Assembly (NCBI GenBank): GCA_002269645.1
Contig: NIVC01001912.1
Location: 124,001-188,000 of the forward strand
Length of the DNA stretch: 64,000 bases
Reading direction: 5' to 3'
Source of the DNA: Macrostomum lignano
Lineage: Eukaryota
In this document: positions 1 to 26,597 of the stretch, in pieces
How the letters are laid out: each line of letters begins with the position of its first letter
How positions within the stretch are numbered: the stretch's first letter is position 1
Made by a program: the position numbers and the translations under genes
Notes under the pieces: generated by a model
The model's database searches: none
Told to the model about the DNA's origin: nothing
Seen by the model: only the letters and a program-made list of their open reading frames with translations

Positions 1-509
1 CAGCAAGTTTACCATATGCACCCCCACTTTTTGAGCGACCCTTGACACATTTTCATGCCTGATCGATTAGATATATATTTTTTAATTACACTGTACATCT
101 CTGACTTTATCTATGACTATTGCGCTACCCCCCGGTCGTTAACAGAATTGTTGTCTACCCCATCCCCTCACTTTTTAAAACGTTCCGACGCTTATGAAAC
201 AACTTAAACGAATTTGATGGATCATGTGAAATTTAGAGCTTATGCGCATATGAAGTCAAATTTTGCTATCGTCGTGAAAAGTATGAAAAATACTTTTCGA
301 CGATTTGTAGTTTTCGAACTAGTGAAACTGACTAAAAATTTGTCTTTTGTCCTTTTCTCTGGTGGGGAGTATAAGGTCAGCCGATCCCTTGAGCAAATTG
401 ACTCCCCTTGGATCCGCGCTAGTGTCGTCCTCGATCTGGTTCCAATGCAAAAATTGGCAAAAATTAAAGTATACCCTGCTGAGTCACCTTGACATACGGG
501 AGCACGAGA

Positions 510-692
510 CAGTAGCGGATCCAGAAAATTTTGAACGGGGGGCGCAGACTACTAATTAAGGCTCATATATATATGCATATCATGTACAAGTATATGTACA
601 TGATAATGTGTATTTTCAGTAGGCCTATAAAAAAATCGAACTCAACGGGGGGGGGGGCGTGCCCTGTGCGCCCCCCTCTAAATCCGCCATTG
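510..692. mobile_element. 183-bp MITE, hAT-like (8-bp TSD)
   Basis: Imperfect TIRs CAGTAGCGGATCCAG (510-524) / CTAAATCCGCCATTG (678-692); exact 8-bp direct repeat GCACGAGA at 502-509 and 693-700. An 8-bp TSD with CAG-starting TIR is typical of the hAT superfamily. Confidence 0.8.
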
Positions 693-1988
693 GCACGAGA
701 ACGAATTGCCTGCCGAGTTTTTCCCGCAATGCTTTTTTCCCGCAGCACATTTTGAGGAGCATTTGATCGGAGTGGCGGCGGCACGCTGAAAGACATTTAT
801 ATGCCTACTAGACTACTAGGACTACTAGACTTGAAGGACGCAAGCAACACTTGCAAATCGTGCAAAAATAGTTGAAGGCCGAAGGCCGAATTAAAATGTC
901 TGCTGTATCTCCGAATCGGTTGCATGTAGAAGGTTCATTTTTTCGCCAGATTGTTGAGATTGTTGACAATTTATAACCTGTAAATTGAAGTGGCTTGCGA
1001 GTGGCAGCAGAATTTTGCAAGCAAACATAGTTGTACCGAGTTTATTTGCTTATAGCTAAACTTATAAACAGCAGTCTGTCCGCCACAAAATTCAGTAGGT
1101 ATGGTAAAACTATATTGAGCAGATTTAATCGTCTGTCGAACAGCGTTGCAAAGTGATAAAACAACAAAAACAAGAAGGAAAATGGAAAAAGTAAACAAGC
1201 AAAACAAGCAAAATGCTTCTATAAATGCCCAAAACGTCTTTTAACGCATTTTGCATTGTAAAAGTGGTAAAAGTGGTGGCTGACCTGGGCATCTCAGTTC
1301 TGGATATCCAAGAGCATCATAGGAGGATAGACAAGTGTGGATCTGCATGGGCCTCAAGTGGTAATTCAAGACCTTCGAAAATCGGCCTTTAACTATTTTT
1401 ACACGAATCGAGTGTTACGTCCATATATAACGAAGTGTTCCTAGTGGTCCTTGTTATATTGGCCCCGCAAACTTTGAATTCAGGCATATGCGTACATCAT
1501 GATGTGGCAACGAACTGCAACTTGGTCTTGCATACGGCTGCCGCGACAGCACTTAACAGCTAGCCAGATTAGTTCTGCTAATGAGAGATTCTTCTTAAAT
1601 TAACAAAGAAAAAATATATAGGTCGTTAACGTTATAATACTGGCATCGAGTTGTGAGTCATTGAAACGCAAATCAAGGTAAAAAGAAAGTTGCGTGCTCC
1701 TACTTTCAGTAGCGCTATTTGCACATTCCGTCCATTAAATCGTAAAACTGTATTTTGTAAGTTATCAGTACAAAATATATAGATTCTTTTACAGAAAAAG
1801 ATTTAGGTTTTAGGTTTTTTTTACTATAAGACGCCTTTTAGACAGGCAATTTACCGTGTTTCTGTACGAATTTTCCAGATTGAGCGCTATTTATGTGTCT
1901 AGACAGTAGATGCTACGAAAACAAGAACTTTTGCTTTGTATATGATTGAGTTTTCTTATTAAAGATGTTGCAAACCTAAAAATTCTTT

Positions 1989-2179
1989 ATCGCTTCTCGG
2001 CCTTATTGGCTAAGATCAAAGTGTAGTTTCTGTTCTTTAGAGATTAATTCCTCTAACGTAGACCATTGGTCTACTAAGTAATTAATCCGGTTTTTGATAA
2101 GTCGGGCCAGTGCTTCGTGTTCACACGACCTGGTCCACGCGTAGGCCTTGCGCTGCAGTACAGCAAGGATCTGCGCATC
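1989..2179 (+). ncRNA. U2: U2 spliceosomal snRNA, full length, variant sequence
   Basis: Starts ATCGCTTCTCGGCCTTATTGGCTAAGATCAAAGTGTAGT. Stem IIa TTAGAG/CTCTAA (2037-2056), its loop complementary to AATTAAT (2080-2086), stem IIb GTAGACC/GGTCTAC, U5 tract at 2091-2095, stem III, stem IV CCTTGC/GCAAGG with loop GCTGCAGTACA. 3' end approximate. Confidence 0.95.
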
Positions 2180-2285
2180 TAAGAAATCTTAAATATCGAA
2201 GGCGAAGCCATGGTAGTATCAAGGAGTACTGTACATGTATATAGCCATGTAGGGTGGTCCTTTGTGTGGTAGGAAGAAGGTAGAA

Positions 2286-2440
2286 TACCGACGTCAGATA
2301 CAAAACTCTGCTCATCTCAGCCCACCCTGTTAACTTTACTTTTACAGCTTTTACCTCGTGACAGCGATCAACCGCGCTGCAGCCTGGGTCGGCCTAGAGA
2401 TCAACCTGGGTGGTTTCTTTCTGGGTGGTTTCAAGTGCGC
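2286..2440 (+). other. Mosaic 5' junction of retroelement 1 (short shuffled element fragments)
   Basis: 2301-2345 copies the element 3' UTR (5433-5475); 2358-2406 copies RT region 3795-3843 (3 mismatches); 2421-2440 matches 12109-12127 of element 2. Confidence 0.8.
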
Positions 2441-5414
2441 ACCGGCGGAAGCAGCATCGGCGGCAGCAGCATCGGCGGCAGCAGCATCGGCGGCGGCTCC
2501 AGCAGCACCCGCGGCTCCAGCAGCACCCGCGGCTCCAGCAGCACCCGCGGCTCCAGCAGCACCCGCGGCTCCAGCAGCACCCGCGGCTCCAGCAGCACCC
2601 GCGGCTCTGGCTCCAGAAGCGCCAACCACAGCCGCGGCGGCAGCATGCCTTCAAGCGATCGCCAACCTACCAGAGGACGACGCAACAGCCTGGCCAGAGT
2701 TCTGCACCGCCTGCGACAGCTTCATCATCGCCGCACAGCCCGAGAACAACCGCAGAGGGAGGGGCGGACCAAGGCGCAACGACAACCTTGCCGCACGGTA
2801 CGCGAGAAACCGTCGCGAAGCCATGCGCGAGATCCTCGGCGAAGCCCGAGTCGAATGCGCGGTCCCCCTCGCTGACGTCGAAGCCGACTTCCGCCGGAGG
2901 TACGCCGACAGAGGACCCCGCGACTGGGACAGTGACGCGGCATACATCCCAACGGCGACCACCGCAGACCACAGCACAGCGGAACCGATAACGGCAGCGG
3001 ACGTACGGCGCGCCCTCAAGGGTCGGACGGACTCTGCGCCTGGCAACGACGGCCTACGGTACTCCGACCTGACCAAGGCCGACCCGTCCGGACGAGCACT
3101 GGCCGCAATCTCCGACCTCTGCCTGCGCCGATTCCACCGCGTCCCGCCCAGCTGGAAGAGCTACCGCACCATCCTGCTGTTCAAGAAGCCGGACCGGTAC
3201 ATCGCCGGCCAAGAATCCGACCTGTCCAAATGGCGGCCCATCACCCTGCTGGACACGTGCTACAAGATCCTGGCAGCCATCCTGGCGGAGCGGGTCACGC
3301 GGTGGGCGTCCGACGCCGACCTGATCAGCCCAGGACAACGTGGCGGACTCCAGTATGAAGGCTGCGCCGACCACAATTATGTTCTGAGAGCATGCCGCGA
3401 CGACGCGCGCCGCCGCAAAGCCGTCCTCGACGCCGCCTTCGTGGACCTCCGCGACGCCTTCACAAGCGTCCCGCATGACCTCCTGTTCGGCCAGCTCGAG
3501 CGAGGCGGCCTAGACGCAGTCACACAGGCCCTCATCCAAGACATTTACGCCGACAACGTCACTGCGGTGTACACCGGCCCTGATCAGGCGACTGCCGACA
3601 TCCCCGTCGAGAGCGGTGTCCGGCAAGGGTGCCCGCTGTCCGGAGTGCTGTTCGCCCTCTGCATGGAGCCGCTACTGCGTGCGCCAAACCAGGCTGACGG
3701 CTACAACCTCCTGGGGCACAGCAGGCAACTCAGCCTCGCCTACGCCGACGACGCTGCGCTCTTAGCCAACAGCGGCGAGGCCCTGCAGCGCACGGTGACA
3801 GCGATCGACCGCGCCGCAGCCTGGGCCGGCCTAGAGATCAACCCCGACAAGTGTGGCCGCCTCACCATCAACGGCGGGCCCGGGGAGGACTTCCAGCTGC
3901 GCGTACAGGCAGGCGCGATCCGGGCGCTCGCAGAGGACGAATTCTACGAGTACCTGGGCGTGCCGGCCGGCGAACGCCGCTCTGCATCCGTGGCGGCGCT
4001 GCTGGAACGCGCGCTCAACGACCTGACGGCCGTGGCGAACAGCGACCTGCTACCGTGGCAGAAGCTCGACGCCTACAACACCTTCATTGCGTCGCGCCTG
4101 CCATTCCACCTCCGCCTGCGCGACGCCGACTGGACGAAGCTCGGCAACCCAAGGCGCAAACTGCAAGGCCATCAGAGAGCGGAGCTGGGCTACGACGAGC
4201 GCGCACGCCAAATCCTCCGCCGCATCGTCTACCTTCCGACGCAGTCCTCGACAGACTACCTTTACGCCGACAGATGCCACGGCGGCCTTGGCCTGTCCCT
4301 AGCGAAGGAGGAGGCAGCCGTCCAGAAGGTCACCGAGGCCGTCAGGCGACTCTGCTGCACCGACGCCGCGCTCAGAGAGCTAGCCTGGGCCGAACTGCGC
4401 GGTTTGGTCCAACGCCGCCTACGGCTCCGGGCTGCACCTGTCCGACCCCGCGACGTCGCCGACTTCCTTAATGGCGCAGCACTCCCACCCAGCGGAGAAA
4501 CGGCCAGCTGGTGGTTCCAAGTCCGCCACGCCACCCGCGAGGTGCTCCACGCGACCGGGCTGCGCTTCACCATCAGCAACGACTGGACGGCCAGCCTAGA
4601 GTGGCGCGACCCGCTGTCCGGTACAATCCAGCGATGCGACAGAGCGGCAGCAATCACCCGGAGGCTTCACCAGGCGGTCAGGGCAGCGCACACGGCGGCC
4701 TGGCGCGGGTGCCACTCCCAGGGCCGATTCGCCACGACTGCCACGCACATCGGCAGCCACACCTGGCTGTTCAGCAGCACCGGCATGCGCGCCTGCGACT
4801 GGCGCTTCATCCACCGAGCGCGGCTGAACCTGGTGCCCACCAACGCGCTCCGGAGACTGGCCGACCCGACATCCGACCCGCGATGCCGCCGCTGCGGAGC
4901 CGGCGTCGAGACGCTCGGCCACGTCATCAACAGCTGCCCGGTGCACGCGGCCAGGTGGAGGGACCGCCACGACGGCATCGTCAACGCCGTCGCCACCGCC
5001 ATCAGCGAGGCCCGCCCAAACGCGACCATCACCACCGACCAGGAGGTCCTCCCCGGCTCTGATCTGCGACCTGACATCAGCATCATGGATCCAGACAGAG
5101 GCCGCCGTCTCCTGATCGAAGTCAAGTCGCCGTTCGAGGTCGGGCCGGCCACGTTCCCACGCAAGCACCGAGCCGTATGCCAAAAGTACGCCGGCATCAC
5201 GCAGCAGCTCAGCGCAGAGGCGCCAACGGCCCTGGCCACTTTCTGCATCGGCTCGCTGGGCGCCTGGTCGCCCTTCAACAACGCCATCCTGCGCGCTGCA
5301 GGCCTGCGCGAGCGCGACATCCGGCACCTCCAACGTCGACTGGCGCTGCACTGCATCCACTGGAGCCGCAACACGTGGGTGGAGCACTGCACCGGCGCAC
5401 CTCAAATCCACTGA
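2358..5414 (+). CDS. Non-LTR retrotransposon polyprotein (RT + CCHC knuckle + RLE), 1018-aa open frame lacking its native N-terminus
   Basis: APGNDGL, WRPITLL, DLRDAFTSVPH, GVRQGCPLS, YADD (3741), YEYLG; CRRCGAGVETLGHVINSC; RHDGIV, PD and IEVK endonuclease motifs. No stops or frameshifts. The first ~28 codons come from the mosaic junction. Confidence 0.93.
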   Translation: MTAINRAAAWVGLEINLGGFFLGGFKCAPAEAASAAAASAAAASAAAPAAPAAPAAPAAPAAPAAPAAPAAPAAPAAPAAPAALAPEAPTTAAAAACLQAIANLPEDDATAWPEFCTACDSFIIAAQPENNRRGRGGPRRNDNLAARYARNRREAMREILGEARVECAVPLADVEADFRRRYADRGPRDWDSDAAYIPTATTADHSTAEPITAADVRRALKGRTDSAPGNDGLRYSDLTKADPSGRALAAISDLCLRRFHRVPPSWKSYRTILLFKKPDRYIAGQESDLSKWRPITLLDTCYKILAAILAERVTRWASDADLISPGQRGGLQYEGCADHNYVLRACRDDARRRKAVLDAAFVDLRDAFTSVPHDLLFGQLERGGLDAVTQALIQDIYADNVTAVYTGPDQATADIPVESGVRQGCPLSGVLFALCMEPLLRAPNQADGYNLLGHSRQLSLAYADDAALLANSGEALQRTVTAIDRAAAWAGLEINPDKCGRLTINGGPGEDFQLRVQAGAIRALAEDEFYEYLGVPAGERRSASVAALLERALNDLTAVANSDLLPWQKLDAYNTFIASRLPFHLRLRDADWTKLGNPRRKLQGHQRAELGYDERARQILRRIVYLPTQSSTDYLYADRCHGGLGLSLAKEEAAVQKVTEAVRRLCCTDAALRELAWAELRGLVQRRLRLRAAPVRPRDVADFLNGAALPPSGETASWWFQVRHATREVLHATGLRFTISNDWTASLEWRDPLSGTIQRCDRAAAITRRLHQAVRAAHTAAWRGCHSQGRFATTATHIGSHTWLFSSTGMRACDWRFIHRARLNLVPTNALRRLADPTSDPRCRRCGAGVETLGHVINSCPVHAARWRDRHDGIVNAVATAISEARPNATITTDQEVLPGSDLRPDISIMDPDRGRRLLIEVKSPFEVGPATFPRKHRAVCQKYAGITQQLSAEAPTALATFCIGSLGAWSPFNNAILRAAGLRERDIRHLQRRLALHCIHWSRNTWVEHCTGAPQIH

Positions 5415-5831
5415 TTTTGCGCCGAACTCTGCCAAACTCTGCTCATCTCAGCCCACCCTGTTACCTTTACTTTTACCTGTTTTATTTATCTTCCCCTCTG
5501 CATTTTTGTTTTACTTTGTTTTTCTTTAATATTTTACTTTTTACTATTTCGTAGTACACGCACTCTGTAAGCATTTTTCGCTGTGATTCCGCCTCTCGCG
5601 CTCATCCCCGCCGCCATCCCGTCTCCTGCGCCTTCACTTTTTCCCACTGTTTTAATTGCATTTACTTCAATGTTTTACTGTTTTACGCATCCTGCGAACC
5701 CGTTTTTTAGCTACTTTCAGTAGCATCATCGGCTCTTGGCCAAATATTTCTGCTTATATCGCTTATTGTGTTTAATACTTAAATATATTGCCCGACCGTC
5801 GGATACTCGGCCGACGGGCAGGGCCTTTCGC
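2441..5831 (+). mobile_element. Utopia-type (NeSL group, RLE) non-LTR retrotransposon, family 1, 5'-truncated
   Basis: RT plus restriction-like endonuclease ORF, ~415-bp 3' UTR, and 3' end (..AGGGCCTTTCGC) joined directly to U2 nt 41 onward (TCTGTTCTT), the known Utopia target position. Confidence 0.9.
5789..5820 (+). other. Subterminal hairpin in element 1 3' UTR
   Basis: CCGTCGG (5796-5802) pairs with CCGACGG (5811-5817), 8-nt loop, 14 nt before the U2 junction. Confidence 0.55.
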
Positions 5832-5982
5832 TCTGTTCTTTAGAGATTAATTCCTCTAACGTAGACCATTGGTCTACTAAGTAATTAATCCGGTTTTTGA
5901 TGAGTCGGGCCAGTGCTTCGTGTTCACACGACCTGGTCCACGCGTAGGCCTTGCGCTGCAGTACAGCAAGGATCTGCGCATC
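5832..5982 (+). pseudogene. U2: U2 snRNA 3' portion (nt 41-end) downstream of element 1
   Basis: Near-identical to 2029-2179; lacks the 5' 40 nt; the 3' flank 5983-6088 also duplicates 2180-2285. Confidence 0.92.
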
Positions 5983-6088
5983 TTAGAAATCTAAAATATC
6001 GAAGGCGAAGCCATGGTAGTATCAAGGAGTACTGTACATGCATATAGCCATGTAGGGTGGTCCTTTGTGTGGTAGGAAGAAGGTAGAA

Positions 6089-6490
6089 GGAAGGAGGCTT
6101 CACCAGGCGGTCAGGGCAGCGCACACGGCGGCCTGGCGCGGGTGCAAAACTCTGCTCATCTCAGCCCACCCTGTTAACTTTACTTTTACCTGTTTTATTT
6201 ATCTTCCACTCTGCATTTTTGTTTTACTTTGTTTTTCTTTAATATTTTACTTTTTACTGTCTCAAAGTTAATGCACTCTGTAAGCATTTTTCGCTGTGAT
6301 TCCGCCTCTCGCGCCCATCCCCGCCGCCATCCCGTCTCCTGCGCCTTCACTTTTTCCCACTGTTTTAATTGCATTTAAAACGAGCACTGGCCGCAATCTT
6401 CGACCTCTGCGTGCGCCGATTCCACCGCGTCCCGCCCAGCTGGAAGAGCTACCGCACCATCCTGCTGTTCGCTTCGCTTCGCTTCACTCC
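6089..6490 (+). other. Second mosaic of element 1 fragments
   Basis: 6093-6145 = 4660-4712; 6146-6377 = 5433-5664 (3' UTR); 6380-6470 = 3092-3182; then TTCGC reiteration. Confidence 0.85.
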
Positions 6491-7763
6491 GGTGGTGACG
6501 TCGGCGGCACCAGCAGTCCCCGCGGCTCCAGTAGCATCAGTGGTGGCAACAGCAGCAGTACCGGCGGCAGCTGCAGCGGCGACAGCAGCAGCACCGGCGG
6601 CAGCAGCACCGGCGGCAGCGGCAGCGGCGTCAGCAGCAGCACCGGCGGAAGCAGCACCGGCGGCCGCGGCAGCGGCGACAGCAGCAGCACCGGCGGCAGC
6701 AGCAGCGGCGACAGCAACAGCACCGGCGGCAGCAGCAGCACCGGCGGCAGCAGCACCGGCGGCAGCGGCAGCGGCGACAGCAGCAGCACCGGCAGCAGCA
6801 GCACCGGCAGCAGCGGCAGCGGCGACAGCAGCAGCACCGGCGGAAGCAGCACCGGCGGCCGCGGCAGCGGCGACAGCAGCAGCACCGTCGGCAGCAGCAG
6901 CGGCGACAGCAACAGCACCGGCGGCAGCAGCAGCACCGGCGGCAGTAGCACCGGCGGCAGCGGCAGCGGCGACAGCAGCAGCACCGGCAGCAGCAGCACC
7001 GGCAGCAGCGGCAGCGGCGACAGCAGCAGCACCGGCGGCAGCGGAAGCGGCGACAGCAGCAGCACCGGCGGCAGCAGCACCGGCGGTAGCGGCGGCGTCG
7101 ACAGCAGCAGCTCCGGCAGCGGTAGCGGCGCCAGCAGCTTTGGCGGCGGCTCCAGCGGCACCCGCGGCTCCAGCAGCACCCGCGGCTTTGGCTCCAGAAG
7201 CACCAACCACAGCCGCGGCGGCAGCATGCCTCCAAGCGATCGCCAACCTACCAGAGGACGACGCAGCAGCCTGGCCAGAGTTCTGCACCGCCTGCGATAG
7301 CTTCATCATCGCCGCACAGCCCGAGAACAATCGCAGAGGGAGGGGCGGACCAAGGCGCAACGACAACCTTGCCGCACGGTACGCGAGAAACCGTCGCGAA
7401 GCCATGCGCGAGATCCTCGGCGAAGCCCGAGTCGAATGCGCGGTCCCCCTCGCTGACGTCGAAGCCGACTTCCGCCGGAGGTACGCCGACAGAGGACCCC
7501 GCGACTGGGACAGTGACGCGGCATACATCCCAACGGCGACCACCGCAGACCACAGCACAGCGGAACCGATAACGGCAGCGGACGTACGGCGCGCCCTCAA
7601 GGGTCGGACGGACTCTGCGCCTGGCAACGACGGCCTACGGTACTCCGACCTGACCAAGGCCGACCCGTCCGGACGAGCACTGGCCGCAATCTCCGACCTC
7701 TGCCTGCGCCGATTCCACCGCGTCCCGCCCAGCTGGAAGAGCTACCGCACCATCCTGCTGTTC
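6491..7763 (+). pseudogene. Internal fragment of family-1 element (long Ala/Pro linker + pre-RT region)
   Basis: GCA/GCG-rich repeats encoding (A,P,T)n, followed by a near-exact copy of ~2590-3182; breaks at CTGCTGTTC before RT motif 1. Confidence 0.88.
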
Positions 7764-7770
7764 GCTTCGC

Positions 7771-7800
7771 TTCGCTTCTCGGCCTTATTGGCTAAGATCA
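7771..7800 (+). pseudogene. U2: U2 snRNA 5' fragment (nt ~1-30) upstream of element 2
   Basis: TCGCTTCTCGGCCTTATTGGCTAAGATCA matches 1990-2018; U2 nt 31-40 are missing at the junction. Confidence 0.88.
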
Positions 7801-8602
7801 CGGCTCGTCATGTCTCGGCTTGGGTGCTCCACTTCACAGTAACATTGTCGTCTCGGCCTTTGGATTCACTGCTCGGAATATGTACACATGCAAGTGCGGC
7901 CGTCAATTTAGGTCCGAGCGCAACCTTAACGCCCATGCCGGCATCTGCAAGAACTCGGCTACCTCGCCCAGCGGCAGCAGTCCAGAGCTGCCTCGATCGA
8001 CCTCAACAGCGTCGAATCAAGGGACTGATGCAGCGGCTACCAGCAGCAGACGACAGTTTGGAGCAGCGCTGCCGAGGGAGGTTTGCCCGGCCTGCCGTAA
8101 GACACTGACAGCCAAAGGCATGTCTCGGCACTTAAACACCTGCGCAGAGAGGCAACGCGCGGCCGGTAACTACGAGGCTGCGGCCAAGGCAAAAGCAGCA
8201 ACGGACGCGCGGCATCGGTGCACGTATTGCGGCGCCAACTTTGAACGCCTTGCGCGCCACGCTGCCGTCTGCCCGGCGCGCAGTCGGGTTGGCGGAAGCC
8301 AGACTACAGCCAACGCCCCAGCCAGTCAACTGGAAGGAGCGACGCACACCTGCGACAGATGCGGCGCGCGCTTCATGTCAACCAGAGCACGCAACATCCA
8401 TGCCAGTCGGTGCCGTCCACTCGAAGGGCCCGCCCTGGTGGGCACTGTCGCGTGCCGGTTCTGCCGTGGCGTCCCTACCGTCGGCCGCTGGGCTCGGCAT
8501 GCCAGTAGCTGTACAGCACGCGCGGCACTGGCCGCGACTCTGGAAGGTGCGGCAACGGCTACGGCGACTCTGCAGTCCGGCCAGACAGCGGCAATGGCCG
8601 CG

Positions 8603-9110
8603 ACCCCGGAGGATGCGGCACCAGCTACGGCGACCCAGCAGTCCCGTCGGCCAGCGGCACAGGTCGCGACCCCGGAGGATGCGGTACCGGCTACGTCGAC
8701 TCAGCAGTCCGGCCGGCCAGCGGCCCTAGTCACGACCCCGGAGGATGCGGCACCGGCTACGGCGACCCAGCAGTCCGGCCGGCCAGCGGCCCTAGTCACG
8801 ACCCCGGAGGATGCGGCACCGGCTACGGCGACCCAGCAGTCCGGCCGGCCAGCGGCCCTAGTCACGACCCCGGAGGATGCGGCACCGGCTACGTCGACTC
8901 AGCAGTCCGGCCGGCCAGCGGCCCTAGTCACGACCTCGGAGGATGCGGCACCGGCTACGTCGACTCAGCAGTCCGGCCGGCCAGCGGCCCTAGTCACGAC
9001 CCCGGAGGATGCGGCACCGGCTACGTCGACTCAGCAGTCCGGCCGGCCAGCGGCCCTAGTCACGACCCCGGAGGATGCGGCACCGGATACGGCAACTCAG
9101 CAGTCCGGTT
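8603..9110 (+). repeat. Coding 66-bp tandem repeat (TPEDAAPATSTQQSGRPAALVT), 7 full units + 1 partial
   Basis: Read directly in DNA and in ORF 7820..10258. Confidence 0.95.
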
Positions 9111-10477
9111 CGTTCGGGCCTGCAGAACTGACGCCAGCCGAACTCTGCTGTGCTGCCCTCGACAACCTGCCTGAGGATGACGAGCAAGCATGGTCTGAGT
9201 TTTGCACGGCCTGTGACTCCCTCGTTGCCGCCGCTGTCCCGGATGAGCGCCGCGGTGGTGGAGGGTCTCATGGACGACGTGGAGCCCCCAATACCAGCCT
9301 GGCGGCTCGTTACGCTGAGAATCGAAAGCGCGCGATGCGGGAAATCCTTGGTGAGGTTCGCGTCGAATGCGCAGTGCCCATTGCAGACGTCGAGACCGAC
9401 TTTCGACGACGCTATGCAGACCGTGGCCCACGAGACTGGGACTGTCCAACCGCCCACCGGCCCGCCCCTGCTTGCCGCGACAGCTTTACGGCGGAGCCAA
9501 TAACTCCGGCAGAGGTCAAACGGGTCATCCGCGGCCGCTCCGATACGGCCCCTGGCAACGACGGGCTGCGCTACTCGGATCTGGGAAAAGTCGACCCACA
9601 CTGCTTCGCTATGGCCAGGATCTTCGACATGTGCCTACGCCGGTTTCGTCGCATCCCGACCGCCTGGAAACGGTACCGCACGGTGCTATTATTCAAAAAG
9701 CCGGACAGGTATGAGGCCGGGCAGGAATCTGACCTCTCCAAATGGCGCCCAATAACCCTGCTGGACACCATCAATAAAATCTTTGCGGCGGTTCTAATCG
9801 AGCGTGTTCTACAATGGGCGACTTCGGCGGTGCTCATCAGCCCGGGGCAGCGCGGCGGCCTCCACTATGAAGGTTTTGCCGACCACAACTACGTGCTGCG
9901 CGCTTGCCGCGACGACGCCCGACGCCGCAAGGTGACGCTGGACGCCGCCTTCCTAGACCTCCGTGACGCCTTCACCAGCGTGCCTCATGACCTGCTATTT
10001 GGTACTCTGGAGCGGGCGGAAATGGACGGGGACACCTTAGCGCTCTTTTGGGACATTTCCGCGGAGAACGTGACCGCTATCCATTCCGGTGAAGACCGCG
10101 TCACCCCCGACATCACGGTTGAGAGCGGAGTGCGCCAGGGCAGGCTCCCTCTCAGGAGTCCTCTTCGCGTTGTGCATGGAGCCCCTCCTACGCGCGCCGG
10201 ATCCTGTCGACGGCTACCTACTGCACAGACACCGGCAGCTCAGCCTTGCGTACGCTGATGACGCGGCGTTCGTCACGAGCAGCGGGGCCGCCCTTCGGCG
10301 CGTTGTCGCGGCGGTCGACAAGGCAGCAGACTGGGCAGGCCTCACCATCAACCCGGGCAAGTGCGGCCACCTTACCATCAACGGCGGCCCGGCCGAGTAA
10401 GCGGAGCTACATGTCGCTGCGGGCCCCATCCGGAGCCTTGCCGAGGACGAGACCTACGAGTACCTGGGCGTCCTGGT

Positions 10478-11566
10478 GCTAAGCGGAACCTTGTCCCGCA
10501 TAGCGATCTGTGCCTCAACTTTCTCAACGAGTGTCAGGCCAATCGCGTCTTCACCGATGGCATTGCCTCAACGCTCAACCTGAGACAGCGCTACTCCGTA
10601 GCTATCGACTCGCGCGATAACATCAATGACCATTGGAACCCTGGTGAGCTTCATTGCTACACCGACGGTTCTAAGCAGTCAGCCAACACCGGCTTTGGTG
10701 TTGGAATCTTTCTGAACGGGAGGGTCATCGCTACCCACGCTCAATACACTGGGGTCAACTCCAGTGTTTTCCAAAATGAAGTTCTGGCCATCAGCTCCTG
10801 CACTGCAGAGCTTCTCGCCACTGGCGTTACTGGTAAGAACATCATTTTCCATTCGGACAGCCAAGCTGCCTTGCACGCCATCAGTGGCTGCAGCACCAAC
10901 TCTGCTACAGTCCTTGACTGTATCAAACTCCTCAATGTGTTGGGTTCCGCCAACAAAATTACCCTTAAGTGGGTTCCGGGGCATGTGGGGATCCGAGGAA
11001 ATGAGTTGGCTGACACCCTTGCAAAAGTTGGTGCCTCCGGCTCCTCTCTCGGCCCCGAACCTCTTGTCCCGATCCCTGGCTGTGTCATCGACTCGCGCAT
11101 CAAAGCGTGGATCAGGACTCAGCACCGCTCGACTTGGGCGAACCGCACGAACTGCAGGCAATCCAGAGGCGCTGTCCCTCAGCCCTCTCCCCAGCTCCGG
11201 AAGCTCCTCTTGCGCCTCTCGCGCAGAGACATCCGGGCTGCCACCATGACCCTCTCTGGTCACGGCTGCTTCTCCAGGCACCAGTACCTGCAGGGCAACG
11301 CCACCAACGCCACCTGTAGTTTCTGCAACTCAGGTGACGAAACCGCTGAGCATTTCGTCAGCATCTGTCCCGCCTTCACGCGGGCCAGACTCACTTACCT
11401 CGGGCCACACACATCTATTACTGAAGCGTGCAAACCCGAAAACTTTAATCAGCTCATGCGCTACCTTCGGGCCACCCGCAGGGCTGAACTCTCCTTTCCA
11501 GAGAGCACCATAGCTGCTGGCGACACTGGGGGACCTCCCTGGGCGGCGCCAACCCTCCGTCCATAG
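10478..11566 (+). CDS. C-terminal part of LINE ORF2: RNase H domain + CCHC knuckle
   Basis: YTDGSK, FQNEVLAI, SDSQAAL, WVPGHVGIRGNELADTLAK (acidic catalytic residues present); CSFCNSGDETAEHFVSIC. The ORF-track start at 10361 is a read-through from host element DNA. Confidence 0.85.
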   Translation, partial: AKRNLVPHSDLCLNFLNECQANRVFTDGIASTLNLRQRYSVAIDSRDNINDHWNPGELHCYTDGSKQSANTGFGVGIFLNGRVIATHAQYTGVNSSVFQNEVLAISSCTAELLATGVTGKNIIFHSDSQAALHAISGCSTNSATVLDCIKLLNVLGSANKITLKWVPGHVGIRGNELADTLAKVGASGSSLGPEPLVPIPGCVIDSRIKAWIRTQHRSTWANRTNCRQSRGAVPQPSPQLRKLLLRLSRRDIRAATMTLSGHGCFSRHQYLQGNATNATCSFCNSGDETAEHFVSICPAFTRARLTYLGPHTSITEACKPENFNQLMRYLRATRRAELSFPESTIAAGDTGGPPWAAPTLRP

Positions 11567-11660
11567 CGACGCGTCGGCCGTTCAGGGACTAGCGGAATGG
11601 GCGCCCGCGCCTTCCCGCTGTGTCCCCTCCGGGACAGCCCTGCAGCTAAGTCAAGTCAAG
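10478..11660 (+). mobile_element. 5'-truncated RNase H-bearing LINE (I/R1 group, LOA-like) nested in element 2
   Basis: 13-bp TSD TGGGCGTCCTGGT at 10465-10477 and 11661-11673; 3' tail TAAG-TCAAG-TCAAG; clade assigned from domain order (RNase H then C-terminal CCHC). Confidence 0.88.
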
Positions 11661-13252
11661 TGGGCGTCCTGGTAGGTGAACGACGTTCTGCGTCTGTCGG
11701 CGCCTTACTCAAGCGGGCGCTCCGAGAGCTGACAGCGGTGGCGAACTGTGACCTCCTGCAATGGCAAAAGCTGAACGCTTACCGCACCTTTGTGGTCTCC
11801 CGCCTGCCTTTTCATCTCAGGCTACGCGACGCCTGCAAGGCGGACAGCGCGCGTAGCTGGGCTATGACGAGAGGGCACGCCAGATCATCCGGCGCGTCGC
11901 CTACCTGTCAGCGGAGTCGACGGTCGACTACCTTTACGCCGACAAGCGCCATGGTGGCCTAGGGCTGCCGCTGCTCAAAGAGGAAGCCGCCATCCAGAAG
12001 GTCGTTGAGGCGCTGAAGCGTCTTGGAGGCAGCGACGAGATACTGCGCGACATTGCCTCGACCGAGCTACCGTGACGTCACCGACTCACCAAGCGGTGAG
12101 ACATCCATCTGGTGGTTTCAAGTGCGCCACGCTGTCCGAGAGGTCCTGCAGCCGCTCGACCTGAAGTTCCGCATCGAACAAGACTGGACTCTGCGTCTGG
12201 AGTGGCGGCACCCGCTGTCTGGGGCGGTCGAGCAGCTCCACCGGATCAGCGCGGCTACGTGCAAGCTGCACGAGGTTGTCCGATCGGCGAACACGGCCGC
12301 ATGGCGCCAATGCCGCTCCAAGGGCTGCTTCGGGACGACGGTGATGCACATCGACCGACACACTTGGCTGTTCAATAGCACCGGGATGCGCGTATGTGAT
12401 TGGCGCTTTGTACAACGAACCCGCCTCAACCTCATTCCAACGAATGCGATGCGGCGGCTTGCTGACCCGACAGCCGAAGCCCGCTGCAGGCGATGCGGCA
12501 CAGAGTCGGAGACTCTCGGCCACGTCCTTGGCGCCTGTCGTGTGCACTCGGGCGGTGGAGGGATCACCACGTCGGCGTCGTCAGCGCGATCGCCGGCGCC
12601 ATTCAAAAGGCGTGCGCGAGCGACTGCGACGTTGCTCAGCGACCAAGATGTGCTGCTGGCTCTGGCCTACGTCCCAAAATAAGCGTGGATGACCCGGCCC
12701 GAAGACGGCACTTGCTGATCGAAGTCAAAACATGGAGACCGGCCCGGCTACCTACTCGCGACAACACCGCGCCATCTCGAGAATTACACTTGCCGCAGAC
12801 ACACCTACGGCCCTTACGTTTGCCGCGTCTGCGTCTTGTGATGTCCTTGTCTTCCCCGCTGGCCGCGGAGGCGCAGGACACGAACGAGGTTGTCTGGCTG
12901 GGCGGGCGGCGTATCTCCGGAAGGTCTGTGCTTGTGCGGACCATTGGTCGTTCCCATTCAAGGCCTGAGTCCAGGGGCCTTGGGGCTCTGACTGGTTGCT
13001 CATGTCAGTGGGAGTCCCTTCTTGGAGGGTGTGTGTCGTGCGCTTGGCTCTTTGTCACCGCACAACAGCACTATCCTGCGTGCTGCCGGGTTCGCCGAGA
13101 GCGTCATCCGCAGCCTTCAGCGTCAGCTTGCGCTCCATTGCATCCACTGGAGCCGCAATACGTGGGTGAGAGCACTGTACGGGTGCACCGCAAGCTTTCT
13201 TACGCACCCGACCTCCCTATGCCTTCGACTGGTCGCCCGCAGTCTCCAAGCT

Positions 13253-13923
13253 TGTTGTGAAACGAGGGTAGGAAGCAGTGCTGTGTGCTGACCGCGGATC
13301 AGCCCGGGGAGGGGCTCTGCCGCTGGATTACAGGGGCCTATCTACCAGGGGCATAAAGCCCGAGCGGCCCAGGTTGAGACCAGGACTCATGGCCTGGAAA
13401 AATATCTTAATTGGTGCTACTAGCCCAAGCCTATGGACTAAGACACCGCCAACCCATAGTGGAATCAGGGACGGTGCTAGGACCGAGTCCACTCAAGCCA
13501 CCCCCCCCCCCAACGACAAAACCCAAGTGTGCGCGCGAAAAATTTTCCCAAATTTTGGAAAAGCGGTCTGAGAGTGGGGAAAACCCCGAAGTCTACGGAA
13601 AAGGCTTTAGATTGGAGCGAATCTGGGCAGCTTATTTACCAAGGGCGAGTCTCCTATCAGAAGGCCGAATTGCACAAAGCTCCTCCTATGGGGCTGCGAG
13701 CCTCAAGGCTTTTTCACTAACCAGCTCTAAACAATTGGAGAATGCTTAAGCGGTCCGAGAGAGGAAATATTCTAGTCTATTGGAGCGAGTCTGGAAGATT
13801 ATTGCGATGGGCGAGTCTCCTATCAGGCAGTTGACCAAAACTACCTATAGGGCTGCGAGCCTCAAGGCTTTTTCGCTATTAAGCTCAGTATAAAGGCCAG
13901 GCCAAGGGGTTGGAGAGGGGCAC
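13253..13923 (+). repeat. Copy 1 of ~670-bp diverged direct repeat with LTR-U3-like features
   Basis: Aligns with 15017-15687; begins TGTTG; internal sub-repeats ATTGGAGCGAGTCT...GGGCTGCGAGCCTCAAGGCTTTTT; TATAAA at 13889. Confidence 0.75.
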
Positions 13924-14524
13924 AATCACTTCTAGCACTTAGCTAGGCAACCCAGTATTCAAATGAAGGTATTTATTACCTTGACTCCTGGTCAGTAAAT
14001 CTCGTCCTTGAGTAGATCTATTTCTTGAGCTTGGTTCCTCTGGATTAGACTCTTACAGTCTTTTCGATCTGGATCCGGATTGGTTAGCGTTGATTCCTGA
14101 ACAACGGTTGCTGCTGAATTTCTCGTCAGCCGGTATCTGTCGTGTAGACCGATAGGAAGCTTCGAATTAACAATGGGATCCCTGCGCCAAACTGCGGTAT
14201 CAAATAAGCCTTCTCCTTCTAGCAGTGACTTAATGCACTCTAGGTAAAGCTCCGGTAATCACTGATAGTCTTCTAAGATCTATCAGAGCAGTCCTTCTGG
14301 AGACTGCAACCAATGGAGTCTAAATAGACCCAAGAGTCTCAACAGACTCAAACTAAACTCAAATGAGACGTCTCAACAACAGGCGCAAATGAGTAAGGCT
14401 TACCGCAAGAATTCAGCCGAGTCTCGTTTGACTTGGGCTTCAGGAAGTCCTGTTAAGGCTTCCTCTTCGGAGCTCTTCTCCTTCCGGAGGATTTCTTGGC
14501 TCTGGGTCCGCTTCGGACCACTTG

Positions 14525-14820
14525 TATTTATAGGCAAATGGACCTCTCTCGAGGTCGTCCATCACCTTTTTCGTAAATGTCAACTGGTCACATTTTGGTG
14601 GCTGTCAAGCATGGCAGGACAGAAAATTGCGCAACTAGTCTACTGTAAAAGCGCATGATTGGTTATCGTAGCTGGTAGCCTTTGATTGGTTCATCCGGGT
14701 GCAAGCCAAATGATGAATCGTAGGTGGGGTTTGAACTGACAAATGTAGGTCGCACGTGACCAATGATGAATCGCAGATGGGGTTTAACTTGACAATTGTA
14801 GGTCACGCATGATTGGTCGG
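14525..14820 (-). promoter_or_regulatory. Putative minus-strand Pol II promoter (TATA + CCAAT cluster)
   Basis: TATAAATA on the minus strand at 14525-14532; ATTGG/CCAAT boxes near 14658, 14685, 14760 and 14811; minus-strand AATAAA near 13975. Motif-level only. Confidence 0.4.
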
Positions 14821-15016
14821 TTGCAAAAAATAACATGTTCGACTTTACTCTCTTGTGGTTGGCTGACTAGAATATACTTGTGATTCAGTACTTAATTTTA
14901 TACATGCTAATTATCTTACTACTGAATAAAAATGTATAAGTAGTATGTTAACCTTATTTACGGATTTTTGAGGAAGGCAGAATACTCTACAGGTAAAAAC
15001 AGTCAGATACCGTCTT

Positions 15017-15687
15017 TGTTGTTGTTAATCGAGGGTGGGAAGCCAGGGGCCCCGCGGATCAGCCCAAGTAGGGCTCTGCCGCTGGGATCTACCAGTGGGC
15101 CATACTGCCAGGGGCATATAGCCCGAGAGGCCACGATTGGGACCAGGGCCTAAAGGCCTGGACATACCTAATTGGGGCTACTAGCTCAAGCCTATGGACT
15201 AAGACACCGCCAACCCAAGGTGGAATCAGGGACGGTGCTAAGACCGAGTCCACCCAAGCCGGCCCCCAACGACAAGACCCGGGAGTGCGCGCAAAAAGAT
15301 TGGAGTTTAGAAAGCGCGGTCCGAGAGTGGGGAAACCCCAAAGTCTACGGAAGTAGTGCTTTAGATTGGAGAGTCTGGGCAGCTTATTTACTAAGGCCGA
15401 GGCTCCTATCAAGAGTAGATTATTGCAAGACCTCCTATAGGGCTGCGAACCACAAGGCTTTTTCACTACCCAGCTTTAAACAGTATTGGAGAATGTAAGC
15501 GGTCCGAGAAAGAAATATCCTAAGTCTGTGGAATAGGGCTTATCTATTGGAGCGAGTCTAGAAGCTTATTGCCAAGGGCGAGTCTCCTGTCAAGCAGGAA
15601 GACCGTCTACCTACAGGGCTGCGAGCCTCAAGGCTTTTTCGCTATCCAGCTCAATAAGGGCCAGGCCAAGGGGTCGGAGAGGGGCAC
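15017..15687 (+). repeat. Copy 2 of ~670-bp diverged direct repeat
   Basis: Same blocks as 13253-13923 (e.g. AAGCCTATGGACTAAGACACCGCCAACCCA identical); followed by AATAAA near 15932. Confidence 0.75.
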
Positions 15688-16027
15688 CAGGGGCAAGAGG
15701 AACCCGGACTCAGCCGGTATTCCCCGATTCGGGACGAACTTATTCCCTAGGACTCCAATCCAACTGTCAGTGATGAGAGCCATGACACATTAAGCAGGGA
15801 GACTACCAGAGGAGCCAGCAGATGGACCAAGGCAAGCAAGATGAACCAGGCAGGGAGGGCAGAGCTCATTACTCCAAAGATTGGATGGCTTCGAGGCCGG
15901 GGATAAAAGCACAAAGCTAAAACACAAAGGAATAAAAAATGGGAGGAGCACCTGAACCCTCAACCTGGGGCTCAGACTCAGGGCTGGCATCAGACTAATT
16001 CTATCAACTGGGTAGGGCCTTCTTCGC

Positions 16028-16145
16028 TCTGTTCTTTAGAGATTAATTCCTCTAACGTAAGCCTTTGGTCTACTAAGTAATTAATCCGGTTTTTGATGAG
16101 TCGGGCCAGTTGGTCCACGCGTAGGCCTTGCGCAGCAGCTGCGCC
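16028..16145 (+). pseudogene. U2: Degenerate U2 snRNA 3' portion downstream of element 2
   Basis: Begins TCTGTTCTTTAGAG; stem IIb mutated, ~19 nt deleted from stem III, stem IV broken. Confidence 0.88.
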
Positions 16146-24308: not shown

Positions 24309-24708
24309 CGAGTGCGCGGACCAAGCAGCGGCAGCAATAAAAAAGACCCAATCAGTGACCTTAGTAGAGAATGCGGTGTGGTGTACAGCTGGAAAATTTT
24401 CCTTTGTTACATTTTTTCTTGTCTCGGAGTAGAACCTGCATTACTGCGTTATTTCTAAAGTCAACTTGTACGAATTACTATTGATGAAAACATTGTACAC
24501 GCTGTGCTACTCTAAATTGAAATTCATATTCAGTTTACACTAGAAACACTGAACAGTTGCTCCATAATTAATTTATGATTAACTACTTGTCAGTTGTCAC
24601 TTTGCTGTTTGTGTTTTTTAACGAAGTTATTTAATCAAAATAACAGATTTAATTTGTTTGTTTCACTTTACTTTCCTTCTACAGTCGTGTTATAATGATA
24701 ATTGATGT

Positions 24709-24812
24709 TTATTATTATTATTATCATTATTATTATTATTATTCAATAGCAGCAGTCGCTGGAATCGAACCTGGGACTTCAGTTTGCATTGCCTCAGACC
24801 TTAGAGGCTAAA
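24709..24812 (-). mobile_element. Possible short tRNA-derived SINE relic
   Basis: Minus-strand B-box GGTTCGATTCC (24761-24771), weak A-box near 24799-24810, followed by an (AAT)n tail. T-stem does not pair fully. Confidence 0.35.
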
Positions 24813-24984
24813 ATATACTACTGCGACATAAATAATTGCGCGTTTTAATCTTTTTAAAAACACGTTTTATTATGGCGAATTGTGCATGAGTGGGCGGCCT
24901 GAATTGTTTTAGTTCGTTTATTGCAGTTTTTTAGCCTGTAGAAACTAGACATCTACACCCTCAGAAAGACGAGTAGATGCTGTC

Positions 24985-25582: not shown

Positions 25583-25713
25583 CCATTATATTTCGCCCGC
25601 CAACCTGTCCGATTGCAGGCCAGCCCCAGGACTGACGCATTTTCTCAGCCACAGCGGCTGCTGTAGCCAATCCGGCAATCCAAAATCATCAGCCTCCCCT
25701 CCCCCCGCGCCGG

Positions 25714-26424: not shown

Positions 26425-26597
26425 TCGCCTGATGTCGATTGGCTACTGTCAACAGTACTACTAAGATTCCGCTTTGCTTTGTATTGGCTCTCTGCTTGCC
26501 AAGGAACTGTTTGTTAATTATAAATTCACTTCCAATTCAATTGAAAATTTATGGAAGCTTAAGTTCACTTCTAGCTTTAATTTGATGATTTATTGAT

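What the first reader, a model, noticed from the sequence alone, without database searches (positions are those of the whole stretch)
1989..16145. U2 snRNA locus colonised at the same nucleotide by two distinct RLE retrotransposon families
Seen: both elements end immediately before U2 TCTGTTCTT (5831|5832 and 16027|16028), and element 2 is preceded by U2 nt 1-30. The two polyproteins are clearly different families (roughly two-thirds identical by eye over RT). Known: Utopia is the RLE-type, U2-specific non-LTR lineage with this target. Inference: two coexisting Utopia lineages compete for one U2 cluster, with one intact gene left, possibly in a host lineage where they are undescribed.
Basis: partly seen in the sequence, partly recalled or inferred. 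Interest (0 to 1): 0.8.

Follow-up and report, generated by a model that had tools for sequence, protein, structure and literature searches.

The report
Utopia retrotransposons in flatworm U2 genes
Two related but long-separated families of a known site-specific jumping gene (Utopia type) have inserted at the same nucleotide of U2 snRNA genes in the flatworm Macrostomum lignano; this is a known behaviour seen in a host group where I found no earlier report.

Summary
The window is Macrostomum lignano contig NIVC01001912.1. It holds one intact U2 gene (1989-2183) and two U2 genes disrupted at the same bond (U2 nt 40|41, before TCTGTTCTT) by non-LTR elements in U2 orientation.

- **Element A (2286-5831):** a young copy with an open 1018-codon RT-CCHC-endonuclease frame. 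It has no start codon and no N-terminal zinc fingers, and its 5' end is a patchwork of its own fragments.
- **Element B (7801-16027):** full length, flanked by U2 nt 2-30 and nt 41 onward (10-bp target deletion). It is decayed by frameshifts, stops, an RPD>RPK change and a nested LINE.
- **A versus B:** 69-73% identical over RT, with saturated synonymous sites (Ka/Ks about 0.2). They are each other's closest relatives.
- **Relatives:** the nearest (37-40% identity) sit in U2 with the same geometry. Nasonia Utopia lies in the same superfamily. R2 is far more distant. Another related clade (33-37% identity to A) targets 5S rRNA genes.

Several Utopia families sharing one U2 array, with intact U2 upstream of copies, was already described in Phytophthora (Kojima and Jurka 2015). 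This is therefore a new member of a known kind in a new host phylum. "Competition" is untested, and both copies here are dead. Repeated identical breakpoints remain unexplained.

The parts
1989..2183 (+). Intact U2 snRNA gene (U2#1)
   Evidence: Rfam RF00004 at 143.4 bits, model positions 1-192. The branch-point box reads GUAGUU and the Sm site GGUUUUUG.
2184..2285 (+). 102-bp U2 3' flank, first copy; it ends ...GGTAGAA
   Evidence: 2029-2285 matches 5832-6088 at 98.4% over 257 nt. Sequence read.
2286..5831 (+). Element A: a 5'-truncated and rearranged Utopia-type element.
- 2286-2300: unknown origin.
- 2301-2353: copy of A-family 3'UTR.
- 2358-2406: copy of its own RT segment 3795-3843.
- 2464-2632: Ala/Pro-coding 18-bp repeats.
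- 2358-5414: open frame of 1018 codons without an ATG.
- 5415-5831: 3'UTR, ending GGGCAGGGCCTTTCGC.
   Evidence: Pfam RVT_1 E=1.6e-28. YADD, the CCHC motif (CRRCGAGVETLGHVINSCP) and RPD...IEVK are read. R2 alignment.
5832..5986 (+). U2 nt 41-195 (U2#2), the 3' half of the gene disrupted by A
   Evidence: 99.3% identical to U2#1. The Rfam alignment shows the true match starts at model position 39.
5987..6088 (+). Second copy of the 102-bp U2 3' flank, ending at the same base as the first
6089..7771 (+). Patchwork of A-family fragments.
- GGAA.
- A 4660-4712 (100% identical).
- A 3'UTR 5434-5664 (95.7%).
- A 3092-3182 followed by (TTCGC)3.
- GC-rich 33/48/195-bp repeats at 6545-7138.
- A 2439-3182 (93.4%) followed by TTCGC repeats.
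7772..7800 (+). U2 nt 2-30, the 5' fragment of the gene disrupted by B
   Evidence: 29/29 identical, E=4e-11. Sequence read.
7801..16027 (+). Element B: a full-length but decayed Utopia-type element.
- 7801-7879: 79-nt leader.
- ATG at 7880.
- 7880-8547: five N-terminal CCHC-type fingers.
- 8548-9108: 66-bp x 8.5 repeats.
- RT, linker, CCHC and RLE run to about 13193.
- 3'UTR runs to 16027, ending GGGTAGGGCCTTCTTCGC.
- Breaks: frame changes near 10150-10198, 12550-12655, 12732 and 13169; 3 in-frame stops; an extra ~225 nt at 12816-13039; RPD changed to RPK.
10478..11661 (+). Nested 5'-truncated LINE of another kind (RNase H domain, (AAGTC)n tail) inside B's RT. It has a 12-bp target-site duplication, GGGCGTCCTGGT, at 10466-10477 and 11662-11673.
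   Evidence: Pfam RNase_H E=1.7e-11. Sequences. The tblastn gap falls between A aa 535 and aa 533.
16028..16138 (+). U2 nt 41-123 plus nt 143-170 (U2#3), a degenerate 3' part with an internal deletion. Its downstream flank is unrelated to the 102-bp flank.

Best explanation
The region is a U2 snRNA locus of the flatworm Macrostomum lignano. It has been hit repeatedly by two sister families of Utopia-type (NeSL-clade) non-LTR retrotransposons.

Each family encodes one protein: N-terminal zinc fingers, reverse transcriptase, a CCHC knuckle and a restriction-like (PD..ExK) endonuclease.

Inferred mechanism, by analogy with R2:
- The endonuclease nicks the bottom strand of a U2 gene between nt 40 and 41 (canonical nt 38|39).
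- The freed 3'-OH primes reverse transcription from the element RNA's 3' end, which in both families carries the motif GGG(C/T)AGGGCCTT(C)TTCGC.
- The top strand is cut 10 bp upstream. A full-length insertion therefore deletes AAGTGTAGTT, the branch-point-binding box, and leaves U2 nt 1-30 upstream.
- That arrangement lets the element be co-transcribed from the U2 promoter.

Shown: domain content, exact junctions, orientation, the 10-bp deletion, divergence of A and B under purifying selection, U2-flanked nearest relatives, and host identity.

Inferred: the nicking positions, co-transcription, and the role of the 3' motif.

Element B is an old, dead, full-length copy. Element A is a recent 5'-truncated copy with a scrambled 5' end. 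A further scrambled block of A-family fragments lies between them. One U2 gene remains intact in the window.
For: - **Host:** the USB1 ORF is found exactly on GCA_002269645.1 contig NIVC01001912.1, and that locus is identical to the window. The assembly is M. lignano Mlig_3_7.
- **U2 pieces and junctions:**
- **Domains:**. R2 structures match at only 167 bits against 400-520 bits for the best relatives.
- **A and B as sisters:** 60/60 and 200/200 NJ bootstraps. With P0036 and P0038: 53/60 and 90%.
- **P0036 locus:** U2 nt 1-28 | element | U2 nt 39 onward, the same 10-nt deletion. P0038 locus: 3' flank is U2 nt 39 onward.
- **Other U2-flanked relatives:** Nasonia P0023 (U2 nt 1-38 upstream), P0016 and L012.
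- **A versus B divergence:** pS 0.61-0.76, pN 0.18-0.30.
- **Published description of Utopia,** its site and multi-family U2 arrays: PMC4640811.
Against: - Only one locus of the host genome could be examined, so family-wide site specificity in M. lignano is not demonstrated.
- No Repbase reference sequences (Utopia, NeSL-1, R5/LIN, YURE, HERO, R4) were available.
- Deep nodes of my NJ trees are unstable. The A/B clade groups with a 5S-rRNA-specific clade in the 152-taxon tree (50/60). It groups with other U2-associated lineages in the 36-taxon tree (50%).
- Neither copy in the window is functional, so activity is inferred.
- No ribozyme or conserved 3' structure was detected.
- The scrambled 5' regions and the repeated breakpoints are not explained by simple target-primed reverse transcription.
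Confidence: 0.85

Rival explanations
1. A and B belong to a U2-targeting lineage that acquired, or re-acquired, U2 specificity independently of classical Utopia, inside a radiation that switches between small-RNA gene targets. Its closest differently-targeted relatives insert in 5S rRNA genes. On this reading, 'Utopia' is a target-defined grade rather than the clade these elements belong to.
For: In the 152-taxon NJ tree, the A/B+P0036/P0038 clade joins the 5S-specific clade to the exclusion of Nasonia Utopia in 50/60 bootstraps. Four of four tested members of that neighbouring clade sit in 5S genes. The 10-bp target deletion differs from arthropod Utopia (no change) and reptile Utopia (20-bp duplication).
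Against: With 36 taxa, the same clade joins the other U2-associated lineages (Nasonia, P0016, turtle, barnacle) at 50%, so the node is unresolved. The insertion bond is exactly the Utopia one. Kojima and Jurka already argue that differently targeted lineages such as NeSL branched from within Utopia.
Confidence: 0.15
2. The array was built partly by the reverse transcriptase itself through serial end-to-end template jumps. In this model the cDNA of a U2-promoter co-transcript reached U2 nt 1/2 and jumped onto the 3' end (TTCGC) of an A-family RNA. Other jumps landed on the 3' end of a U2 read-through RNA ending 102 nt past U2. The last of these rebuilt an intact U2 gene upstream of element A.
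For: - Two junctions use exactly the same end of the 102-bp flank: 2285|2286 and 6088|6089.
- TTCGC repeats, the element's 3'-terminal pentamer, abut U2 nt 2 at 7771|7772. They abut the start of an A-family unit at 6485|6486.
- Segment joins have 0-3 nt overlaps.
- The upstream region of U2#1 is unrelated to the flank, which argues against simple 297-bp tandem units.
- Intact U2 upstream of Utopia copies was an unexplained observation in Phytophthora.
- End-to-end template jumping is an established property of R2 reverse transcriptase (my knowledge; see also the title of PMC8594491).
Against: - The 45 nt that follow both flank ends are 100% identical to each other (2301-2345 = 6145-6189). That fits duplication of one pre-existing junction at least as well.
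- There is no evidence that a U2 RNA ends 102 nt downstream.
- Unequal recombination between the 257-bp U2+flank repeats could generate the same order.
- This is a single locus from a long-read assembly of a repeat-rich neopolyploid genome.
Confidence: 0.1
3. There was a single insertion followed by segmental duplication and decay, so A and B would be copies of one event rather than two colonisations.
For: The U2 3' half plus flank is duplicated at 98.4% identity, so local duplication does occur at this locus.
Against: A and B differ at 27-44% of amino acids. Synonymous sites are saturated and Ka/Ks is about 0.2. Their 3'UTRs are unrelated except for the last ~18 nt. The flanking U2 3' halves differ: U2#3 is 95% identical with an internal deletion and has a different downstream flank.
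Confidence: 0.02

Closest known systems
Utopia (NeSL clade, RLE-type non-LTR retrotransposons; Kojima and Jurka 2015, PMC4640811)
   Same: Single ORF with N-terminal zinc fingers, RT, a C-terminal CCHC finger and a PD..ExK endonuclease. The 3' junction falls exactly before U2 TCTGTTCTT. Orientation matches U2. The 5' junctions are variable. A verified Nasonia Utopia copy lies in the same protein superfamily (E=1e-80).
   Different: - Host phylum: Platyhelminthes, not in the published host list.
- Only 33-40% identity to any protein in a 15-billion-protein collection.
- 10-bp target deletion, against no change in arthropods and a 20-bp duplication in reptiles.
- Five N-terminal fingers, against the one to three reported.
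- GC-rich 3' terminus GGGCCTT(C)TTCGC.
- No RNase H (oomycete trait) and no Ulp1 protease (nematode trait).
Phytophthora U2 arrays carrying several Utopia families (same paper, S2 Fig and Tables 2-3)
   Same: Different families occupy the same U2 array at the same site. An intact U2 gene, rather than a 5' U2 fragment, lies upstream of a copy. Disrupted U2 genes outnumber intact ones.
   Different: Here the two families are sisters within one host lineage. One full-length copy does retain the U2 5' fragment. The oomycete elements carry an archaeal-type RNase H upstream of RT.
Keno (Tx1 clade, APE-type, U2-specific)
   Same: Identical 3' flanking U2 sequence, so the same insertion bond.
   Different: Keno has an apurinic-like endonuclease. 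A and B have no APE domain and carry a restriction-like endonuclease.
R2 (28S rDNA-specific RLE element; cryo-EM structures 9nl2, 9nl3, 9dou, 8gh6)
   Same: RT-linker-CCHC-RLE architecture aligns over RT and RLE (167 bits). It is the model for target-primed reverse transcription, 5'-junction variability and co-transcription with the target gene.
   Different: Different target, no Myb domain detected, and much lower similarity than to Utopia-like proteins.
Unnamed 5S rRNA-specific RLE elements in metagenome and Logan contigs (P0003, P0004, P0008, P0009)
   Same: 33-37% identical to A over 89-99% of the query. Same architecture, and the same habit of sitting in a small RNA gene in the gene's orientation with the 5' gene fragment retained.
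   Different: The target is the 5S rRNA gene (insertion before ACTTGGATGGG, about nt 79) with a 1-3 nt deletion. The 3' ends are AT-rich with AATAAA.

Membership tests
Utopia | Non-LTR element with one ORF: N-terminal zinc finger(s), RT, C-terminal zinc finger and a PD..D/ExK restriction-like endonuclease | tested here: met
   B has five CCHC-type fingers, RT, CCHC and a degenerate RLE. A has RT (RVT_1 1.6e-28, YADD), CCHC and RPD..IEVK, but lacks the N-terminal part.
Utopia | 3' end abuts U2 snRNA gene at TCTGTTCTT (canonical nt 39), in U2 orientation | tested here: met
   Junctions at 5831|5832 and 16027|16028. Only two junctions in one locus were available.
Utopia | Family-wide preference for U2 across genomic copies | not testable with these tools
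Utopia | RT phylogeny places it in the NeSL clade with Utopia families | tested here: inconclusive
   The nearest relatives are U2-flanked (P0036, P0038; 88-90% bootstrap). Nasonia Utopia, turtle, ant and barnacle proteins lie in the same group, and R2 is a distant outgroup. No Repbase references were available, deep nodes are unstable, and a 5S-specific clade is interleaved.
Keno (Tx1 clade) | Apurinic/apyrimidinic-like endonuclease N-terminal to RT | tested here: not met
   No PF03372 hit in A or B; an RLE is present instead.
R2 | Insertion in 28S rDNA and an N-terminal Myb domain | tested here: not met
   The target is U2, Pfam finds no Myb domain in B's N-terminus, and similarity to R2 structures is 167 bits or less.
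NeSL-1 / Utopia-1_TSP type | [quoted passage not shown] | tested here: not met
   No PF02902 hit in A or B, although relative P0013 has one. The target is U2.
Oomycete Utopia | Archaeal-type RNase H upstream of RT | tested here: not met
   The only RNase H in the region belongs to the nested foreign LINE at 10478-11661, which has its own target-site duplication.

The most novel reading that the evidence does not exclude
The repeated breakpoints record serial template jumps by the Utopia reverse transcriptase, including a jump onto a U2 read-through transcript. The breakpoints are the same end of the 102-bp U2 flank used twice, and the element's TTCGC tail butted against U2 nt 2. On this reading an insertion can rebuild an intact, promoter-linked U2 gene upstream of itself. 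Such parasite-mediated target regeneration would explain two open points from Kojima and Jurka (2015): why intact U2 genes rather than 5' fragments lie upstream of Utopia copies, and how several families persist in a handful of U2 genes.
Probability: 0.1. Interest if true: 0.7.

Novelty: new member of a known kind. Interest (0 to 1): 0.3.

Why it matters
It extends the U2-specific Utopia retrotransposons to free-living flatworms, in a regeneration model organism with a sequenced genome. It shows the coexistence of two families at one U2 site, previously documented in oomycetes, recurring in an animal. An unidentified marine host shows the same thing. It also defines a sublineage with a fixed 10-bp target deletion that removes the branch-point-binding box of U2.

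Site-specific RLE elements are currently being mined as genome-insertion tools (PMC13580325). U2- and 5S-specific relatives with clear junctions add natural examples of target switching among small-RNA genes. The finding does not reveal a new kind of system.

Tried and rejected
- **First homologue search:** the full A frame was swamped by its Ala/Pro low-complexity words and gave 2 hits. I repeated it without the first 100 residues.
- **Other M. lignano copies:** no protein above 40% identity exists in either protein collection. The host's TE frames appear not to be in them, so a genome-wide tabulation of flanks was impossible.
- **5' self-cleaving ribozyme or any other RNA family:** Rfam at E<=1 over 1-17500 and over relatives' loci found only U2 and 5S.
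- **Conserved 3'-terminal RNA structure:** A's last 80 nt fold slightly better than shuffles (z = -2.6), but B's do not (z = +0.5). B's leader does not either. Only the last ~18 nt are alignable.
- **A second internal 3' end in B's 2.8-kb 3'UTR (tandem non-autonomous element):** the terminal motif occurs only at the two true ends.
- **297-bp tandem U2 units (U2 + 102 bp):** the 300 bp upstream of U2#1 has no similarity to the flank beyond shuffled controls. This is not excluded for downstream units.
- **Metagenome scan with a clade profile:** it returned mostly generic RTs. Only L012 was informative (U2-flanked). L013-L015 and L008 had no recognisable flank.
- **Supplement of PMC4640811:** it holds no protein sequences, so no Repbase references could be added.
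Full report
**Host and context**

An intronless USB1/HVSL reading frame at 25714-26424 (Pfam E=1.5e-38) is found letter for letter on NCBI assembly GCA_002269645.1, contig NIVC01001912.1. The 4.7 kb fetched from there is identical to window 23714-28424. The window therefore corresponds to about 124001-188000 of that contig. The assembly is Mlig_3_7 of the free-living flatworm Macrostomum lignano (PMC10733133). The rest of the window is dominated by minisatellites.

**The observation**

Rfam finds one complete U2 at 1989-2183 (143 bits) and a second match whose genuine part starts at model position 39. BLAST of the intact U2 against the window gives four further pieces:

| U2 positions | Window coordinates | Identity |
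|---|---|---|
| nt 41-192 | 5832-5983 | 99.3% |
| nt 41-123 | 16028-16110 | 95.2% |
| nt 143-170 | 16111-16138 | 96.4% |
| nt 2-30 | 7772-7800 | 29/29, E=4e-11 |

This U2 has two extra bases relative to the Rfam consensus. Its nt 41 therefore corresponds to canonical nt 39, the first T of TCTGTTCTT.

The two 3' junctions read ...GGGCAGGGCCTTTCGC|TCTGTTCTT (5831|5832) and ...GGGTAGGGCCTTCTTCGC|TCTGTTCTT (16027|16028). The only correction is that the upstream fragment is nt 2-30, not nt 1-30.

**Element B (7801-16027)**

- After U2 nt 30 comes a 79-nt leader, then an ATG at 7880.
- Five CCHC-type zinc fingers follow, then a 66-bp x 8.5 coding repeat, then RT, a linker, a CCHC knuckle and the endonuclease region.
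- Compared with A by tblastn, the frame changes at least four times (near 10150-10198, 12550-12655, 12732 and 13169). It contains three in-frame stops in the pieces used and an extra ~225 nt at 12816-13039.
- The nuclease motif reads RPK...IEVK instead of RPD...IEVK.
- A foreign 5'-truncated LINE with an RNase H domain and an (AAGTC)n tail sits in the RT at 10478-11661. It is bracketed by a 12-bp duplication, GGGCGTCCTGGT.
- B is flanked by U2 nt 2-30 and nt 41 onward. The insertion therefore removed the ten bases AAGTGTAGTT, the branch-point-recognition box.

**Element A (2286-5831)**

- An open frame of 1018 codons (2358-5414) carries RVT_1 (E=1.6e-28), YADD, CRRCGAGVETLGHVINSCP and RPDISIMDPDRGRRLLIEVK. 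It aligns with R2 cryo-EM proteins over both RT and endonuclease.
- It has no start codon and no zinc-finger region.
- Its 5' end is a patchwork: 15 nt of unknown origin, 45-53 nt of A-family 3'UTR, a 49-nt copy of its own RT segment 3795-3843, and Ala/Pro repeats.
- A is therefore a recent insertion that was probably non-functional from the moment it inserted.
- Directly upstream is the intact U2 plus a 102-bp flank, not a U2 5' fragment. Directly downstream is U2 nt 41-195 plus the same 102-bp flank (98.4% over 257 nt).

**The block between the elements (6089-7771)**

This block is made of A-family pieces in the following order:

1. A 4660-4712 (100% identical).
2. A 3'UTR 5434-5664.
3. A 3092-3182 followed by (TTCGC)3.
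4. About 600 bp of GC-rich repeats.
5. A 2439-3182 (93%), again followed by TTCGC repeats that run into U2 nt 2.

TTCGC is the 3'-terminal pentamer of both elements.

**How different A and B are**

| Region (A residues) | Amino-acid identity |
|---|---|
| aa 100-442 | 69% |
| aa 427-535 | 73% |
| aa 533-865 | 56% |

Proportions of synonymous differences are 0.61-0.76 (saturated), against 0.18-0.30 non-synonymous. The two lineages therefore diverged long ago while under purifying selection. They are distinct families, not decayed copies of each other. Their 3'UTRs share only the last ~18 nt.

**What they are related to**

A full HMMER scan of 1.84 billion representative proteins finds 750 relatives at E<1e-30. 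The best is only 40% identical. R2 structures score 167 bits or less, against 400-520 bits for the best relatives.

In neighbour-joining trees of the RT and linker columns, rooted on R2:
- A and B are sisters in 60/60 and 200/200 bootstraps.
- They join P0036 and P0038 in 53/60 and 90%.

I fetched the DNA around the relatives. Results by flank:

| Relative | Locus | Flank found |
|---|---|---|
| P0036 | L005 (Tara metagenome) | U2 nt 1-28 upstream, U2 nt 39 onward downstream; same 10-nt deletion as B |
| P0038 | L007 | U2 nt 39 onward downstream |
| P0016 | L011 | U2 nt 1-43 upstream |
| Nasonia LOC116416772 (P0023) | L004 | U2 nt 1-38 upstream |
| unnamed | L012 | U2 nt 39 onward downstream |
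| P0003, P0004, P0008, P0009 | L003, L002, L009, L010 | 5S rRNA gene |

- P0036 and P0038 are 67% identical and lie in identical U2 sequence. A second, unidentified marine host therefore also carries two families at this site.
- Nasonia is a published Utopia host.
- The four 5S relatives have 5S nt 1 to about 75 upstream and ACTTGGATGGG... downstream.

Whether the A/B clade is closer to the 5S clade (152 taxa, 50/60) or to the other U2-associated lineages (36 taxa, 50%) is unresolved.

**Comparison with the literature**

Kojima and Jurka 2015 (PMC4640811) define Utopia as RLE-type NeSL-clade elements inserted at this U2 site, the same site as the APE-type Keno. They report several points that bear on this finding:
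- The 5' junctions vary: no target change in arthropods and a 20-bp duplication in reptiles.
- In Phytophthora, several families share the same U2 arrays.
- In Phytophthora, intact U2 genes rather than 5' fragments lie upstream of copies, and disrupted U2 genes outnumber intact ones.

The central pattern of this finding is therefore already described. What I did not find in the literature:
- **The host.** Their host list and supplements contain no flatworm. No paper in the held library pairs Macrostomum with Utopia. Later R2/Utopia surveys do not mention it. Repbase itself could not be consulted.
- **The fixed 10-bp deletion geometry.**
- **The five-finger N-terminus.**
- **The GC-rich 3' motif.**

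**Mechanism**

By analogy with R2 (established knowledge, supported by the alignment), I infer the following:
- Bottom-strand nicking at 40|41.
- Target-primed reverse transcription from the RNA 3' end.
- Top-strand cleavage at 30|31.
- Expression as a co-transcript from the U2 promoter, since full-length copies retain U2 nt 1-30 in the sense orientation.

None of these steps is demonstrated here.

**Unexplained features**

- Two junctions use exactly the same end of the 102-bp flank (2285|2286 and 6088|6089).
- Each is followed within 15 or 56 nt by the same 45-nt A-family segment (100% identical).
- TTCGC repeats abut U2 nt 2.

Serial end-to-end template jumping by the RT would account for all of these, and it would imply regeneration of an intact U2 gene. 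Duplication of one junction by unequal recombination, short tandem U2 units, or assembly error are at least as likely. Only the whole genome and raw reads can decide.

**Verdict**

This is a real, correctly observed feature. It is best filed as two new sister families of Utopia-type U2-specific retrotransposons in a new host phylum, repeating a published pattern. Interest is modest. The breakpoint pattern and the 5S-specific relatives are the parts worth following up.

Noticed in passing
L002, L003, L009, L010 (metagenome and Logan contigs encoding P0004, P0003, P0008, P0009): A clade of RLE-type elements, 33-37% identical to A, is inserted in 5S rRNA genes. 5S nt 1 to about 75 lies upstream and ACTTGGATGGG(T)GACCGCC... 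downstream, with a 1-3 nt deletion. All four tested members show this. The only 5S-gene LINE listed in a 2024 review (PMC10946416) is the APE-type Mutsu, so this lineage may be undescribed.
   Followed up: partly
L005/L006 and L007: P0036 and P0038 (67% identical) lie in identical U2 sequence from an unidentified marine host. This is a second case of two diverged families sharing one U2 site. L005 shows the same 10-nt target deletion (AAGTGTAGTA) as element B.
   Followed up: yes
window 10478-11661: A 5'-truncated LINE of another clade is nested in B's RT. It has an RNase H domain, a C-terminal Cys/His motif, an (AAGTC)n tail and a 12-bp target-site duplication. Its clade was not determined.
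   Followed up: partly
window 1989-2183: The intact U2 reads GUAGUU instead of the near-universal GUAGUA in the branch-point-binding box, and GGUUUUUG at the Sm site. I could not check whether this is the species' functional U2 or a variant copy.
   Followed up: no
window 25714-26424 and 22006-22461: An intronless 236-aa USB1/HVSL (U6 snRNA phosphodiesterase family) reading frame lies about 10 kb from the U2 locus. A protein-kinase C-terminal exon lies upstream of it. Both correspond to called genes on the M. lignano contig.
   Followed up: partly
window 21100-61450: This stretch is almost continuous arrays of minisatellites (units of 4-34 bp, arrays of 0.3-4 kb, more than 20 different units) with strong strand-composition skews.
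   Followed up: no
window 13252-13923 and 15019-15687: B's unusually long 3'UTR (about 2.8 kb) contains a ~670-bp direct repeat (79% identical) spaced 1.77 kb apart. It could be an internal duplication or two copies of an unrecognised small element.
   Followed up: no
L011 2095-2213 and 3087-3129: In the contig carrying P0016, an intact 5S rRNA gene lies about 900 bp upstream of the U2 gene that the element has disrupted. The two targets used by the related clades are physically linked in that host.
   Followed up: no
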